From positions 33,542,001 to 33,606,000 of the forward strand of contig NC_088859.1 of assembly GCF_963853765.1 (NCBI RefSeq): DNA of 64,000 nt, given 5' to 3'. Origin of the DNA: Magallana gigas. Taxonomy: Eukaryota. Each line of letters begins with the position of its first letter. Positions within the stretch are counted from its first letter, which is position 1. The translations under genes were made by a program, and so were the position numbers. Under the pieces are notes generated by a model. It was not told the origin of the DNA and did not search any database. It saw nothing but the letters and a program-made list of their open reading frames with translations. Shown in pieces: positions 16,834 through 43,829 of the stretch.

Positions 16834-16837
<4 letters not shown>

Positions 16838-18263
16838 GCAGCCAGTGCAAGTGGAATGAGGAAAAAGAAAGTGATAGCCGATGTTGACCCTAGAAAAAAG
16901 AGAAAAAAGAAGTAGTCCAGAACCCTAGCAGCCACTTTCCACGTAATGTATAGGGTGTCATCCCGGTTCTTAAGTTCGTCATCGTCATCATCTTCCTCCT
17001 CTTCATCATCAGGATTTATCTCTTTGAGAGTGTCTTCGGGACAGCACAACTTTTTGCATTTATCACATTTGATGAATGCAATGATGTGGCGCAGGTATTT
17101 CGGGACTTCTGACTCCTCGTGCTGGTGATGAACTCGGAGAACAAAGATGGTCACAATGGTGGACACAGCACTCAGACACAACATCAGGGTCAGGAAGTAA
17201 CAGAGCATGGACATAGGCTCTGACGCTTTCGGAAGGTTATCAGCGACCATTGAAAGGAAGACAGCAAACGTCAGAAAGGCCGTTATGGCGTATCCGACGC
17301 GTTCACCCGAGTCTGCTGGCAGCAGAAACACCAGCCCATTCAGGAGACTGAGGATAAGGATAGGGATGATCATGTTGACTATAAAGTAACCGGGTTTCCT
17401 CTCCAGGTTCAGAACAAAGTTGATATAGACAGAGTTGTCTTTCACTTCTTTAGCAACCAATGTGCTGCCAATGGTCCACTCCACGTTTTCTTGATAGTGA
17501 GTCAAGTCAACAGACATGTCAGGGGTGATGAAATCGATCTAAATTGAACCCCAAAAAACATCCTTAATGCAATGTATTATTATATACATAAAAACGAAAA
17601 ACTGCTATAAACGGCACGCCCCTATCAAATTGGTTTGTGTTCGTTATACCGCACAATTTTACTTGTTTGATTTATCTAGCATATAAAAAACAAGGAAAGA
17701 AATAAAGCACAAACCTGGTCTATGGTATAGCCCCACGGATTGAAAGTAATGTTACAGGACTGTTTGTCAAAGGGGTAGTAGGTAATGTCAATGGAACACG
17801 CTGTCTTTGATACAATTCCCACCTGCCACTCATGGTTGCCGTCGTTATCTATACGGATCCGGTAACTCTTGTCTCCGAGTTCCTTGAGAGATTCCACTGA
17901 GTTGGAGAGGACAATGGTGGGCTTCCACAACTGGTCCTGAGGGAGAAGCATCCTCAACATATTACTCTCGGTGATTGTCCACCTCAAAAGTTCGTTTTCC
18001 CACTTTGCTGTCAAATACGCCACCATCTCGATTTCTCCCGCCACTTCATTGAAGTCCGTAATGGCGATGAGGAAAAAAGATAACTCCACTGTGATGTTGT
18101 CATTCTGGTTGGTGCGAGGGAAGACTTTCTTGTTGTACGTACTATACGGGGCCTGTCCCAGCCAAGTTTTGAAATCAGAAGGACCTGGATTAGTTTGGCC
18201 GTTCACAGCAGGCAACAGGCAAAAGATGCTGATTACGGTTCCTGCAAACACTAACCCCAGCAT
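16834..18263 (-). CDS. nAChR-like Cys-loop ligand-gated ion channel subunit A (non-alpha, 417 aa, 2 exons)
   Basis: Exon 1 18263-17715 (donor CAG|GTTTGT). Exon 2 17538-16834 (acceptor AATTTAG|ATC), phase 0, in frame. Signal peptide, Cys-loop CSIDITYYPFDKQSC, M2 DSGERVGYAITAFLTFAVFL, acidic M3-M4 loop, M4. Confidence 0.93.
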
Positions 18264-18391
18264 CTTGCTTCACTGTTTTCCTTTAATGCTTTTCTTCTTT
18301 ATTCCAACGACGTCCGGAATTATGGTTCTATTTGCCCATGCGCCATTTAAACGTTTTAATTAGATAATGAACCCAGAGGCCATTTAAAAAA

Positions 18392-41411: not shown

Positions 41412-42587
41412 TTTTTTACCAATCGTAGATATACGTAGATCCGAAACTCCGAGCTTGAGATTTTAGACTTTGATTTGTGCAACGAAACATGAAGTGTGGC
41501 TCAAGACTATAAAGAACCATGCTACATAAATTTCACTGTAACAAAAACAAAAGAAAACAAAACCTTTTGCTAAATTTTAATAAAATTAGAAATTTGATAC
41601 AACTTAAACTGCTTAGCCTAAACAGAATCGATTCAATCTCGAATGATTTTCTAAAGGAACAATAGATAAAGAATATTACGATTCACCATGCCCTTCATTG
41701 CAATACCCCTCCATAAATACTTATCTAAGTAAGATAAATATAATAAATATTATGAATTATAAAAATCAGTAAGATTTTCAATCTTAAATATGCTATTCTA
41801 AACTATGTTTGTACGAAATGAATTAAACAAGTAATATCTACAGTTTAAACCTTTAGATAATTCTCAATAATTAATTTACTGAAATATTTCTTTTAAAATA
41901 AAAATAAAATTATTTTCAATGGATACATTTCAGTTATTTTGTTAGCGATTTTGGCAACGAGATGGATTTTAGAACCAATTTATTTTTTTCTATATTGCAT
42001 ATACGTTTGCTGTTAAATTTTCAAGTACTTAAGAAATATCTGCCTTTTTTCTTCAATAGTCAAATTAGAAATAGGTTACGGACATGGAACATTGAGACGG
42101 ATCTATATGTCGTAGAATTAGCATGGAGCAATGCGGAATTTCATAAACTAGTCATTGCAATTTAGGCAGCCTAAAGTTTACAGATTGCAATCATTTTTAG
42201 TAATTTTGATCTCAAACAACATAATGTAAAGATATGTGTTTTTACTGAATAAGAAATGTTTGATAAATTCGTTTTTCCTACAATTTTTACAAAAAAAATA
42301 TATACATGTATTTAATTAAACCAATCTTTTTTCGCTCGTAATTTTAAACCACCTTTTAATCAATATAATTATCTATTTTTAGTGGTGTTGAGTTGACTTT
42401 CTTCCATTAGTTTAGATACTAAACAATAAACACTAGTAAAAACATTTTATTTTGACATTTAACAAACAAAATTTTATTTCAATTCAATGCATTCGATTTA
42501 TTGGTACATGTATATAAGGCGTAAACAAAAGAAGGGGCAAAACTTTTTGAATAAACGAAGTAAAAAACACATTTCACACAGTCCAGT

Positions 42588-43829
42588 TTAGGATCCGTTA
42601 GTGGAGAGAGGGACCAAGAAGATAATCGTACAGACAAGGTTAATCAGAATGAACAACACGAAGAACAGAATGTCCAGCGCCAGCCCCACCAGACGGTACG
42701 TGATGTTTTCTGTGGGTCCCAGAATCACCGGCTTAACATCCTCCTTCTTCTCAGGGGCCGCCCAGCCGGCCATTTCTTCGTCAGACAGTTGTTTCTTTGG
42801 ACAGCAGTACCTGGCCAGGATTATTGCAACGACGACTTTCAACCATTTGGGGACCTCTGTCGATTTGTCGTAGATTCTCAGCGTTAGAATGGTCACCACA
42901 GTAGAGGCAGACGAGAGGTAAACCATGACGGTTAGGAAGTAGACTACCAATGCCATCGGGTTCGAAGTATGAGGCAAATTGGAAGATATCATGTCGAGAA
43001 AGAAGGCAAAAGTAAGGAATGCCGTAATGATGTAACCCACCCTCTCTCCATCATCCACCGGCATGAGGAAGACAAGGCCTGTCAGCAAGCCGATGAGGAT
43101 TATGGGTAATACCATGTTGAGAAGAAACCATGTTGGTTGACGTTCAAGAGTCACGGAAAATGTAAGGAAAGAAAGGCCTCCTGTTGAGGAATTGGAAACT
43201 TTGGACTCTCCTAGGGACCATTGCTCGTTTTGTGTAAATAAACTCAAGTCAATCACCTCGTCCCTAGAATACAGGTTCATCTCTGATTCGGTGTATCCCC
43301 AGTTAGTGAAGGTGATATCGCAAACCTGTTTGTCAAAGGGGAAGTAGGTAGCATCCACCGAGCAACTGGTTTTGGTTATCACTCCTGGAATCCATTGAAT
43401 CCATCCGATACCGGGGATAACACGGACGTGATACGAGGAATCACCGACCATCTTTAAGGACTCCACTGAGTTGTAGACGGTTACGGGTGGTAGCCAGACA
43501 TCGTTTTGCGGAACCAGGGCCTCGGAGATGTCAGCATAGGCTGACGCATACAGTCGCTGTAAATTCTCGTCAGTCCACGAGATTTTCAATTTGGCGACAA
43601 GTTCTAAAATGCCTGCGACTTCATCGAATCCGTTGATGGAGATCAGCTGGAGACCCATCATTACGGACACTTGTCCGTGGGTTTTGTGCTTCGGGAATAT
43701 GTTCTTGTCATAATTGTTCTTCATGTCCGTCAAATATGATTTCACTGTTGTACTTGTCAACGAACCGTTGGAGGATGGAAGTCTTAGAATTGCAAATACT
43801 ATCAAAGTCCATAATGATTTGGTAAACAT
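42588..43829 (-). CDS. nAChR-like Cys-loop subunit H (intronless, 413 aa)
   Basis: Signal peptide, Cys-loop CSVDATYFPFDKQVC, M2 DDGERVGYIITAFLTFAFFLDMI (Phe 13', Asp 16'), short M3-M4 loop, M4. Confidence 0.94.
   Translation of the reverse strand: MFTKSLWTLIVFAILRLPSSNGSLTSTTVKSYLTDMKNNYDKNIFPKHKTHGQVSVMMGLQLISINGFDEVAGILELVAKLKISWTDENLQRLYASAYADISEALVPQNDVWLPPVTVYNSVESLKMVGDSSYHVRVIPGIGWIQWIPGVITKTSCSVDATYFPFDKQVCDITFTNWGYTESEMNLYSRDEVIDLSLFTQNEQWSLGESKVSNSSTGGLSFLTFSVTLERQPTWFLLNMVLPIILIGLLTGLVFLMPVDDGERVGYIITAFLTFAFFLDMISSNLPHTSNPMALVVYFLTVMVYLSSASTVVTILTLRIYDKSTEVPKWLKVVVAIILARYCCPKKQLSDEEMAGWAAPEKKEDVKPVILGPTENITYRLVGLALDILFFVLFILINLVCTIIFLVPLSTNGS

What the first reader, a model, noticed from the sequence alone, without database searches (positions are those of the whole stretch)
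16834..43829. Eight-gene tandem array of atypical Cys-loop receptors: candidate oyster chemosensory channel repertoire
Seen in sequence: eight co-oriented, intact, highly divergent subunits, six intronless and two with one intron. Each has a signal peptide, a C-x13-C loop and TM1-4, and none has the alpha-subunit YxCC. Established: nAChR-like genes are expanded and often intron-poor in bivalves. Cephalopod chemotactile receptors are also intronless, clustered nAChR derivatives that lost ACh binding and sense poorly soluble compounds. Nematode DEG-3-group channels sense choline or betaine. Inference: this array may be an independently derived, combinatorial receptor set for environmental, microbial or settlement cues in gill, mantle or larval sensory cells. 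No pseudogene among the eight argues for selection on each copy.
Basis: partly seen in the sequence, partly recalled or inferred. Interest (0 to 1): 0.82.

Follow-up and report, generated by a model that had tools for sequence, protein, structure and literature searches.

The report
Gill-specific oyster nicotinic-receptor-like gene cluster
The region really holds eight intact, transcribed genes for nicotinic-receptor-like ion-channel subunits of the Pacific oyster, but they are already catalogued members of the known bivalve expansion; published data show they are switched on almost only in the gill, and a chemosensory role is possible but untested.

Summary
Observation confirmed. Window 16834-43829 holds exactly eight co-oriented (minus-strand) Cys-loop channel genes: six with an uninterrupted coding region, two with one phase-0 intron at the same position. 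RNA contigs from three studies confirm both introns.

The window is Magallana (Crassostrea) gigas. One spliced model is 100% identical to an NCBI protein. By Cys-loop sequence the genes are OYG10011838-11845 of Jiao et al. 2019, so they are already catalogued.

What I add:
- That paper's expression table shows all eight as gill-specific (up to 79 RPKM; mantle and palp 0.16 or less). They are near-silent in larvae and rise at spat.
- Saccostrea echinata keeps the array gene for gene, with omega about 0.04-0.13.
- The g1/g2 split predates the oyster/pearl-oyster split.
- A ninth clade member, relocated in M. gigas, is also gill-specific.
- All keep the loop-B Trp, 9' Leu and pre-M1 Arg; six keep the -1' Glu. 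None has the loop-C Cys pair or Tyrs, or the loop-D Trp.

Most likely they are non-alpha subunits of cation channels in an abundant gill cell type. The ligand is unknown. The chemosensory reading is not excluded (about 0.2); a settlement-cue role is contradicted.

The parts
16834..18263 (-). g1 (OYG10011838), 417 aa. Exon 1 is 18263-17715, the intron is 17714-17539 (176 nt, phase 0) and exon 2 is 17538-16834.
   Evidence: Sequence read; model built. It is 99.5% identical over 417/417 aa to the transcript-derived P0007. The splice joint is present in RNA contigs of X1, X10 and X2. The Cys-loop matches OYG10011838. Gill 65.5 RPKM.
20424..22002 (-). g2 (OYG10011839), 433 aa. Exon 1 is 22002-21475, the intron is 21474-21198 (277 nt, phase 0, same position as in g1) and exon 2 is 21197-20424. 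The mRNA 3' end lies near 20329.
   Evidence: Sequence read. The model is 100% identical over 433/433 aa to the NCBI M. gigas protein P0008. The joint and a poly-T loose end at 20329 appear. Gill 17.8 RPKM.
23464..24879 (-). g3, 471 aa, coding region without intron. It is the second half of the fused model OYG10011840.
   Evidence: Gill 43.5 RPKM for the fused model. The Saccostrea ortholog is also 471 aa.
25849..27207 (-). g4, 452 aa, coding region without intron. It is the second LBD of the fused model OYG10011842.
   Evidence: It is 99% identical to P0018 (Logan contigs, 121 members). Cys-loop match. Gill 78.9 RPKM for the fused model.
30031..31425 (-). g5, 464 aa, coding region without intron. 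It is the first LBD of OYG10011842. The pore motif is 'EEG-R': a one-residue deletion removes the -1' Glu.
   Evidence: The 464-aa ORF was seen on hundreds of Logan contigs.
35304..36596 (-). g6 (OYG10011843), 430 aa, coding region without intron. It is the most conserved member (87% to Saccostrea). The pore motif is 'DQG-R'.
   Evidence: Gill 3.1 RPKM.
40023..41411 (-). g7 (OYG10011844), 462 aa, coding region without intron.
   Evidence: Gill 8.0 RPKM, zero or near zero elsewhere.
42588..43829 (-). g8 (OYG10011845), 413 aa, coding region without intron.
   Evidence: It is 99.8% identical to P0001. AlphaFold2 pLDDT is 82 with a nAChR fold. Gill 1.6 RPKM.

Best explanation
These are eight functional genes for non-alpha subunits of the nicotinic-receptor branch of the Cys-loop (pentameric ligand-gated) channel family in the Pacific oyster.

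They form an old tandem cluster that arose by local duplication well before oysters diversified. The cluster has been kept gene for gene under purifying selection.

The whole clade, including one member that has left the cluster in M. gigas, is switched on when the gill forms and is expressed almost only in gill. Levels are high enough to suggest an abundant epithelial cell type, probably ciliated.

Each subunit keeps the parts needed to gate and conduct:
- the Cys-loop FPFD motif;
- the pre-M1 Arg;
- the 9' Leu gate;
- the M2-M3 Pro;
- the -1' Glu that marks cation selectivity, in six of eight.

None can build a canonical acetylcholine site on either face.

Inferred mechanism. The subunits assemble with each other and/or with the alpha-type subunits that are also expressed in gill. 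The resulting cation channels admit Na+/Ca2+ when a ligand binds, and this tunes ciliary and mucociliary activity of the gill.

The gating ligand is unknown. The conservative reading is neural or paracrine acetylcholine, or a related quaternary amine, acting at alpha/non-alpha interfaces or through the invariant loop-B Trp. A waterborne cue is the alternative.

Shown: gene structure, transcription, splicing, gill specificity, conservation and residue pattern. Inferred: cell type, assembly, ion selectivity, ligand and physiological output.
For: Family and fold:
- Pfam LBD plus TM domains in all eight.
- The best solved relatives are human alpha7 and muscle nAChRs (E 1e-40).
- AlphaFold2 gives pLDDT 82, and the Foldseek top 50 are all nAChRs.

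Transcription and splicing:
- Three RNA studies show exactly the predicted joints. Stranded reads indicate minus-strand RNA.
- The g2 model is 100% identical to an NCBI M. gigas protein.

Gill specificity (Jiao 2019 Table S1), in RPKM:
- Gill values for the seven published gene models: 65.5, 17.8, 43.5, 78.9, 3.1, 8.0 and 1.6.
- Mantle, palp and haemocytes are 0.16 or less; every other organ is 1.3 or less.
- Larval values are near zero, and spat/juvenile values reach 28.
- The relocated clade member OYG10000478 has gill 163.

Conservation:
- Syntenic 1:1 orthologs in S. echinata, in the same order and with the same intron.
- dN 0.08-0.23 against a saturated dS, so omega is about 0.04-0.13.
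- TM1-3 is 85-98% identical between orthologs.
- In the tree, every ortholog pair has 100/100 support. The g1/g2 clade contains Pinctada and scallop sequences at 99/98.

Residues:
- Loop-B Trp, 9' Leu, pre-M1 Arg and the Cys-loop are invariant. GER is present in six of eight.

Co-expressed alpha-type subunits in gill: OYG10003306 (31 RPKM), 10004198 (19) and 10003307 (9.5).

Literature: AChE is high in gill. Gill-enriched nAChR genes are linked to ciliary control in mussel and lucinid transcriptomes.
Against: - No ligand, current, cell type or subunit partner has been shown.
- None of the eight has the loop-D Trp that complementary ACh-binding subunits normally keep; it is Tyr or Phe in four. 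Their use as the minus face of an ACh site is therefore not assured.
- ChAT is not expressed in gill (Jiao 2019).
- g5 and g6 lack the -1' Glu.
- No RFX X-box or shared upstream motif was found that would tie the genes to ciliated cells.
- Ganglia were not among the sampled organs.
Confidence: 0.5

Rival explanations
1. The subunits form water-facing chemoreceptor channels on the gill. This would be an independent transition from neurotransmitter receptor to chemoreceptor, analogous to cephalopod chemotactile receptors. The receptors would detect algal, microbial or toxic compounds and adjust pumping or particle handling.
For: - The canonical ACh site is lost on both faces: no loop-C Cys pair or Tyrs, and no loop-D Trp.
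- The gill is the main water interface, and expression is gill-restricted.
- ChAT is absent from gill.
- Paralogs differ strongly at pocket positions, while orthologs mostly agree.
- Co-expression would allow combinatorial heteromers.
- Precedents exist: CRs and the orphan Alpo4 also lack ACh signature motifs.
- The relocated clade member carries a mucin-like extracellular N-terminal extension.
Against: - There are essentially no transcripts in mantle or labial palp, and almost none in larvae, so the genes are not settlement-cue receptors.
- Bulk expression is high for a sensory-cell receptor.
- The paralogs are old, with 1:1 orthology and omega around 0.1 or lower, rather than showing rapid turnover.
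- Pocket positions are no more conserved or diversified than the rest of the extracellular domain, apart from a looser loop-C tip.
- No functional data exist.
Confidence: 0.22
2. Orphan receptors for another endogenous signal, for example choline, betaine, a monoamine, protons or a lipid/sterol-like molecule. They would form homomers, or heteromers among clade members, in gill cells without needing alpha subunits.
For: - The invariant loop-B Trp can make cation-pi contacts with amines. g6 keeps aromatic residues at the loop A, B and D positions.
- NCBI labels a Mytilus relative 'betaine receptor acr-23-like'; this is automatic naming only.
- Alpo4 binds a sterol derivative in its orthosteric site.
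- Strong purifying selection fits a stable endogenous ligand.
Against: - No ligand evidence.
- DES-2 is a weaker match than alpha7 (4.8e-30 against 1e-40).
- The loop-C aromatic residues needed by known amine sites are absent.
Confidence: 0.2
3. The genes are drifting retro-copies, or non-conducting subunits with no function of their own.
For: - Jiao 2019 notes that more intron-poor than intron-rich nAChR genes have no or low expression.
- g6-g8 are expressed at only 1.6-8 RPKM.
Against: - All eight are intact in two genera, with omega about 0.04-0.13.
- The gating and pore residues are invariant.
- They are expressed in a coordinated, tissue-specific way.
- They are spliced and polyadenylated.
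Confidence: 0.03

Closest known systems
Expanded intron-poor, tandemly arrayed nAChR genes of bivalves (Jiao et al. 2019, BMC Genomics 20:937)
   Same: These very genes are in that catalogue as OYG10011838-11845, matched here by Cys-loop sequence. They share its features: intron-poor, in a tandem array, non-alpha, with a diverse ligand-binding domain and high in gill.
   Different: Nothing is different in kind. New here for this locus:
- corrected gene models, since two published models are fusions;
- coordinated gill-only, post-metamorphic expression of the whole clade;
- synteny with Saccostrea;
- omega estimates;
- a residue-level site table.
Cephalopod chemotactile receptors (CRs; van Giesen 2020, Allard 2023, Kang 2023)
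   Same: Both are nAChR-derived, mostly intronless and clustered, and form cation-channel subunits that lack ACh signature residues. Both are peripheral, non-synaptic candidates.
   Different: - CRs are a predominantly cephalopod clade.
- Of 20 proteins sampled from the 150 best library representatives, every one that carries a name is bivalve.
- CRT1 does not appear among the 60 best PDB sequence matches or the 50 best fold matches, whereas vertebrate nAChRs do.
- CR pockets are under diversifying selection and the family expanded recently. These genes are old, have 1:1 orthologs and are under purifying selection.
- No ligand or sensory-cell evidence exists here.
Alpo4, orphan lophotrochozoan nAChR-like receptor of Alvinella pompejana (eLife 2023;12:e86029)
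   Same: Both are lophotrochozoan nAChR-like subunits without the loop-C Cys pair, with an unknown ligand and a conserved loop-B Trp.
   Different: Alpo4 keeps the aromatic residues of loops A, C and D (F103, Y199, Y205, W65). The oyster array has lost the loop-C Tyrs and the loop-D Trp.
Vertebrate non-alpha and accessory nAChR subunits (beta2, beta4, alpha5, beta3) and alpha7
   Same: These are the best sequence and fold matches. Shared features are the GE(K/R) cation motif, the 9' Leu, the Cys-loop and, in the non-alpha subunits, no Cys pair.
   Different: Only 22-25% identity in structural alignment. The loop-D Trp of complementary subunits is missing. Expression is epithelial and gill-specific rather than neuronal or muscular.
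Nematode DEG-3/DES-2 and ACR-23 group
   Same: Divergent nAChR-family channels with non-ACh preferred agonists (choline, betaine). This is stated from my own knowledge.
   Different: DES-2 is a weaker match than alpha7. DEG-3/DES-2 are alpha-type subunits with the Cys pair, whereas these are not. No orthology is indicated.

Membership tests
Cys-loop pentameric ligand-gated channels, nAChR branch | Neur_chan_LBD plus Neur_chan_memb domains, a C-x13-C loop, four TM helices and the pLGIC fold | tested here: met
   Pfam. C-x13-C in all eight. AF2 model with pLDDT 82; the Foldseek top 50 are all nAChR chains. phmmer best hit is alpha7 at 1e-40.
Cys-loop pentameric ligand-gated channels, nAChR branch | Cation-selectivity signature: -1' Glu (GEK/GER), with no PAR motif | tested here: met
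   GER in g1-g4, g7 and g8. g5 (EEG-R) and g6 (DQG-R) have a one-residue deletion, conserved in Saccostrea. No PAR motif in any of them.
nAChR alpha subunits | Vicinal Cys pair (YxCC) in loop C | tested here: not met
   Absent in all eight and in their Saccostrea orthologs.
ACh-binding nAChR interfaces | Aromatic box: loop A Tyr, loop B Trp, loop C Tyr188 and Tyr195, loop D Trp55 (alpha7 numbering) | tested here: not met
   Mapped through the g8/alpha7 alignment onto the array alignment, in the order g1 to g8:
- loop B Trp: invariant;
- loop A: S, A, F, F, V, Y, D, Y;
- loop D: Y, Y, T, R, F, Y, I, K;
- loop C: both Tyr positions are non-aromatic, except Phe in g6.
Cephalopod chemotactile receptors | Membership of the CR clade in a phylogeny | tested here: inconclusive
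   No CR sequence could be obtained. Indirect evidence:
- CRT1 is absent from the best 60 PDB sequence hits and the best 50 fold hits.
- Of 20 proteins sampled from the 150 best library representatives, every one that carries a name is bivalve.
- Published trees place CRs as a predominantly cephalopod clade, but report a 'CR-like' clade that includes bivalves.
Cephalopod chemotactile receptors | Intronless, clustered genes | tested here: met
   Six of eight have coding regions without an intron, and two have one intron. All lie in one 27-kb array.
Cephalopod chemotactile receptors | Insensitive to ACh; gated by poorly soluble or hydrophobic compounds | not testable with these tools
   Needs electrophysiology.
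Cephalopod chemotactile receptors | Expression in peripheral chemosensory cells | tested here: inconclusive
   Bulk RNA is gill-specific. The cell type is unknown. Levels of 18-79 RPKM argue for an abundant cell type.
Cephalopod chemotactile receptors | Diversifying selection on the ligand pocket and lineage-specific expansion | tested here: not met
   Pairwise omega is about 0.04-0.13, with 1:1 orthologs across Magallana and Saccostrea, and paralog splits that predate the oyster/pearl-oyster split. Site models were not run because too few taxa were available.
Nematode DEG-3 group | Orthology or closest similarity to DEG-3/DES-2; alpha-type loop C | tested here: not met
   DES-2 scores 4.8e-30 against 1e-40 for alpha7. 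No Cys pair is present.

The most novel reading that the evidence does not exclude
The gill-specific clade (these eight genes plus the relocated ninth member) would be a bivalve ionotropic chemoreceptor repertoire on the water-facing gill epithelium. It would have been derived from nAChRs independently of cephalopod CRs, and would couple waterborne algal, microbial or toxin cues directly to ciliary pumping and particle handling.
Probability: 0.2. Interest if true: 0.8.

Novelty: already known. Interest (0 to 1): 0.33.

Why it matters
Bivalves carry 100-200 nicotinic-receptor-like genes, and nobody knows what most of them do. No member of the expansion has a known ligand.

This locus is a good experimental entry point for four reasons:
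- It is a small, ancient, syntenic cluster whose members are all gill-specific and highly expressed.
- The open reading frames are intact and mostly intron-free, so they are easy to clone.
- The pattern of lost ACh-site residues is defined, residue by residue.
- Candidate alpha partners expressed in the same organ have been identified.

Two outcomes would each be informative. If the subunits prove to be gated by waterborne compounds, that would be a second, independent transition from neurotransmitter receptor to chemoreceptor within molluscs. If they prove cholinergic, they would help explain how filter feeders control the gill pump. As it stands, the finding itself is a re-discovery of published genes.

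Tried and rejected
1. RFX X-box motifs, as a test of ciliated-cell regulation. No match anywhere in the window.
2. Shared upstream k-mers in the 500 nt before each ATG. ATTGTTC (6 of 8 genes) and ATTAATTA (5 of 8) were the only candidates. They were not replicated upstream of the Saccostrea orthologs and are not significant given the number of words tested.
3. Relics of the two extra Saccostrea genes (gX, g0) in the window. Only chance-level hits.
4. Placing the genes relative to cephalopod CRs. No CR sequence could be obtained through the tools. The PDB sequence list and Foldseek list are filled by vertebrate nAChRs and do not show CRT1. The protein atlas gave only family-level neighbours.
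5. Precise dN/dS. dS between Magallana and Saccostrea is saturated: NG86 and YN00 mostly fail, ML dS is 1.5-2.3, and the g4 value of 11.7 is unreliable. Only 'omega far below 1' is claimed.
6. Strict monophyly of the eight against other M. gigas arrays. The backbone is unresolved in the careful tree, and L023/L024 fall in the same polytomy.
7. Literature search for the CGI_ gene identifiers. No paper found.
8. Rfam scan of 14-46 kb. Nothing found.
9. Earlier findings of the scan near this place. None.
10. Complex prediction was not run. Any two pLGIC extracellular domains would be expected to dock, and its controls are unrelated proteins. It would therefore not tell homomers from heteromers.
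11. Tissue of the RNA runs I laid. Sample names are coded, so they add transcription and splicing evidence but no tissue information.
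Full report
**What is there**

A six-frame ORF list and a tblastn of the array proteins against the whole window show exactly eight Cys-loop receptor loci. All lie on the minus strand between 16834 and 43829, and none lies in the 16.8-kb and 20-kb flanks. 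Pfam finds Neur_chan_LBD and Neur_chan_memb in every one.

Six genes have an uninterrupted coding ORF:
- g3: 24879-23464, 471 aa
- g4: 27207-25849, 452 aa
- g5: 31425-30031, 464 aa
- g6: 36596-35304, 430 aa
- g7: 41411-40023, 462 aa
- g8: 43829-42588, 413 aa

Two genes are split by one phase-0 GT..AG intron at the same codon, directly after the loop-B 'PWG[YF]T..Q' motif:
- g1: 18263-17715 plus 17538-16834, 417 aa
- g2: 22002-21475 plus 21197-20424, 433 aa

All models translate without internal stops. Each protein has a hydrophobic N-terminus, a C-x13-C loop and one to five N-glycosylation sequons in the ectodomain. Paralogs are 26-49% identical overall: 34% on average in the ectodomain and 46% in TM1-3.

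**Organism and gene-model support**

The spliced g2 model is 100% identical over 433/433 residues to 'acetylcholine receptor subunit alpha [Magallana gigas]' (P0008). g1, g4 and g8 are 99.1-99.8% identical to full-length ORFs assembled from public runs. The window is contig C7:33,542,001-33,606,000 of a 564-Mb assembly.

RNA contigs of three runs from three studies carry precisely the two predicted joints: 17538|17715, skipping 176 nt, and 21197|21475, skipping 277 nt. Both read CT..AC on the plus strand. A poly-T loose end marks the g2 mRNA 3' end near 20329. In a stranded poly-A library the first mates lie only on the plus strand over the genes, which fits minus-strand transcripts.

**Already catalogued**

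The Cys-loop sequences match, letter for letter, entries of Figure S2 of Jiao et al. 2019:
- g1 = OYG10011838
- g2 = OYG10011839
- g3 = the second LBD of OYG10011840 (whose first LBD is g2's)
- g5 and g4 = the first and second LBD of OYG10011842
- g6 = OYG10011843
- g7 = OYG10011844
- g8 = OYG10011845

That paper reports the following for C. gigas:
- 132 nAChR genes, of which 44 are intronless and 34 have one or two introns.
- 72 genes in tandem arrays of up to eight.
- Only 33 genes with the loop-C Cys pair.
- Highest expression in gill.

A 2026 preprint (MolluscaGenes) places cephalopod chemotactile receptors (CRs) as a mainly cephalopod clade. It reports a 'CR-like' clade that includes bivalves. 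It explicitly raises an ionotropic chemosensory role for divergent molluscan nAChR clades.

In this assembly a Pfam scan gives at least 153 LBD matches. Many fall in other intron-poor arrays: at least 11 hits at C10:11.04-11.10 Mb, 9 at C2:60.92-61.03 Mb and 8 at C4:8.20-8.26 Mb. The array is therefore real but ordinary for this genome, and lack of YxCC is the majority state.

**Expression**

Table S1 of the same paper gives organ RPKM in the order mantle, digestive gland, gill, adductor, haemocytes, labial palp, female gonad, male gonad:

| Gene model | M | Di | Gi | A | He | Lp | Fg | Mg |
|---|---|---|---|---|---|---|---|---|
| OYG10011838 (g1) | 0.12 | 0.42 | 65.5 | 1.3 | 0 | 0.16 | 0.36 | 0.38 |
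| OYG10011839 (g2) | 0.14 | 0.24 | 17.8 | 0.34 | 0 | 0 | 0 | 0.04 |
| OYG10011840 (g2 LBD + g3) | 0.06 | 0.39 | 43.5 | 1.2 | 0 | 0 | 0.45 | 0.22 |
| OYG10011842 (g5 + g4) | 0 | 0.60 | 78.9 | 1.1 | 0 | 0.14 | 0.06 | 0.50 |
| OYG10011843 (g6) | 0 | 0 | 3.1 | 0.1 | 0 | 0 | 0 | 0.9 |
| OYG10011844 (g7) | 0 | 0 | 8.0 | 0 | 0 | 0 | 0.22 | 0.20 |
| OYG10011845 (g8) | 0 | 0 | 1.6 | 0 | 0 | 0.08 | 0 | 0.13 |

Across 38 developmental stages the genes are near zero. The exceptions are 1-2 RPKM for g2, OYG10011840 and g7 around the trochophore and D-larva stages. In the rows I read, pediveliger values are 1.4 or less. All then jump at spat and juvenile:
- g1: 22.6 and 27.8
- g2: 25.2 and 24.2
- OYG10011842: 18.4 and 22.3

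So the whole array is co-regulated, gill-specific and post-metamorphic. It contradicts the mantle, palp and larval-settlement options. The levels point to an abundant cell type.

**Evolution**

Saccostrea echinata carries a syntenic, co-oriented array with one ortholog of each gene in the same order. Protein identities for g1 to g8 are 78, 77, 73, 79, 68, 87, 76 and 81%. The g1 and g2 orthologs have the intron at the same place. dN is 0.08-0.23 and dS is saturated (1.5 or more), so omega is roughly 0.04-0.13. Between orthologs, TM1-3 is 85-98% identical, the ectodomain 70-86% and the cytoplasmic loop 48-90%.

In a maximum-likelihood tree:
- Every ortholog pair has 100/100 support.
- The g1/g2 clade contains a Pinctada sequence as sister to g2 (98/96).
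- The same clade contains seven scallop sequences (99/98).

The g1/g2 duplication and the shared intron therefore predate the split between oysters and pearl oysters. The deeper paralog splits are older still. The backbone is unresolved, so strict monophyly of the eight against all other M. gigas genes is not shown.

S. echinata has two further genes in the array. One (gX, between g5 and g4) is the ortholog of two dispersed M. gigas genes at C4:42.95 Mb and C9:5.42 Mb (100/100). No relic of gX is left in the window. Its published model OYG10000478 is the most gill-specific of all: 163 RPKM in gill against 3.4 or less elsewhere, and 33.5 and 68.7 in spat and juvenile. Gill specificity is thus a trait of the clade and survived relocation.

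A profile of the eight scores them at 520-611 bits, the two dispersed copies at 436-448 bits and every other gene of the genome at 335 bits or less. I sampled 20 proteins from the 150 best representatives in a 1.8-billion-protein library. Every one with a name is bivalve: Magallana, Ostrea, Mytilus, Argopecten, Ylistrum, Mercenaria and Potamilus.

**Residues**

The best solved relatives are human alpha7 and muscle-type or neuronal nAChRs (E 1e-40 to 1e-32). 5-HT3A and nematode DES-2 follow at about 1e-30. An AlphaFold2 model of g8 (pLDDT 82) matches nAChR chains at TM-scores of 0.7-0.8 and 22-25% identity.

I mapped alpha7 site residues through the g8/alpha7 alignment onto the array alignment. 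In the order g1 to g8:
- Loop-B Trp149: invariant.
- Loop-A Tyr93: S, A, F, F, V, Y, D, Y.
- Loop-D Trp55: Y, Y, T, R, F, Y, I, K.
- Loop C: no Cys pair and no Tyr188 or Tyr195 equivalent, except Phe in g6.

These states are mostly identical in the Saccostrea orthologs. Positions in loops A, B, D and E agree in about 85% of cells, close to the ectodomain average. The four loop-C positions agree in about 65%.

The gating and pore hallmarks are intact: the Cys-loop [FY]P[FW]D motif, the pre-M1 Arg, the 9' Leu and the M2-M3 Pro. Six genes have the cation motif GER. g5 (EEG-R) and g6 (DQG-R) have a one-residue deletion that removes the -1' Glu, and Saccostrea conserves it.

The proteins therefore look like working cation-channel subunits. 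They cannot form a canonical ACh site on either the principal or the complementary face.

**Interpretation**

- Secure: eight functional, selected, gill-specific non-alpha nAChR-family subunit genes in an ancient cluster.
- Inferred: they form cation channels in an abundant gill epithelial cell type and modulate ciliary or mucociliary activity.
- Open: the ligand.

The cholinergic or accessory-subunit reading has four supports:
- Alpha-type subunits are expressed in gill: OYG10003306 at 31 RPKM, 10004198 at 19 and 10003307 at 9.5.
- AChE is high in gill.
- Mussel and lucinid transcriptome papers link gill-enriched nAChR genes to the control of ciliary beating.
- The genes evolve slowly and as 1:1 orthologs.

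The chemosensory reading is favoured by the degenerate site on both faces, the water-facing organ and the absence of ChAT mRNA in gill. It also has precedents in CRs and the orphan Alpo4. Neither reading is tested. I put the epithelial-channel model with an endogenous cholinergic-type ligand at about 0.5, another endogenous ligand at 0.2, a waterborne ligand at about 0.2, and non-function at 0.03.

**Novelty and score**

The observation re-discovers published genes of a published phenomenon. The functional idea has been voiced in general form. The locus-specific synthesis is new but incremental: a co-regulated gill clade, synteny, purifying selection, a site table, corrected models and candidate alpha partners. 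Interest is modest. It would be high only if the chemoreceptor reading proved true.

Noticed in passing
window 2804-3253 and 6819-7268 (minus strand): Two 149-aa ORFs, each a complete C1q domain (E 1e-22 and 2e-23). They are probably exons of tandem C1q-domain genes, another family expanded in oysters, lying next to the receptor array.
   Followed up: partly
window 52783-53921 (minus strand): Two ORFs match the DHHC palmitoyltransferase domain, probably exons of one gene upstream of the array. All eight receptors carry a Cys-rich motif just after M3 (for example CxxCxK or CCxxK), which looks like a palmitoylation site. The adjacency may be coincidence.
   Followed up: no
window 18917-18963 (between g1 and g2): A piece of about 35-45 nt reaches RNA depth above 2000 in contig runs. 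In raw reads it has depth on both strands and loose ends on both sides. This is the signature of a short dispersed repeat shared by many transcripts, not of local transcription. There is no Rfam match.
   Followed up: partly
L009 (G000:C4:42951010-42955272) and L010 (G000:C9:5419912-5424177): These are the two dispersed M. gigas copies of the ninth clade member (gX; published model OYG10000478, gill 163 RPKM). They carry a long Thr/Pro/Ala-rich, mucin-like extension between the signal peptide and the ligand-binding domain. It is much longer than in Saccostrea, and in L009 it is built of 'TTAAPA'-type repeats. A mucin-like stalk on a Cys-loop receptor ectodomain is unusual and would fit an apical, mucus-facing position.
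   Followed up: partly
L001 474-1868 (S. echinata, upstream of the g8 ortholog): An additional 464-aa receptor ORF (g0), sister to g8 on a long branch. It has a 30-residue insertion in the M1-M2 loop and has lost the GER motif. It is probably degenerating or strongly diverged. It has no counterpart in the M. gigas window.
   Followed up: partly
window 30031-31425 (g5); also 20424-24879 and 25849-31425: Public gene models are imperfect. NCBI XP_034312890.1 (436 aa) is 28 residues shorter than the 464-aa ORF. That length fits a start at the internal Met (residue 29), which would drop the signal peptide; I did not align the two. The 464-aa ORF is the form seen on hundreds of assembled contigs. 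The older models OYG10011840 and OYG10011842 (UniRef K1Q503, 870 aa) fuse neighbouring genes.
   Followed up: partly
window 35304-36596 (g6) and 30031-31425 (g5), M1-M2 loop: A one-residue deletion replaces the cation motif GER by 'QG-R' (g6) or 'EG-R' (g5). Saccostrea conserves it. These two subunits may alter conductance or Ca2+ permeability of heteromers. g7 and g8 also have an Asp at pore position 16'.
   Followed up: no
window 16834-27207, cytoplasmic M3-M4 loops of g1-g4: Runs of 8-12 consecutive Asp/Glu residues lie just before the pre-M4 helix. They are poorly conserved in sequence but recur in several paralogs.
   Followed up: no
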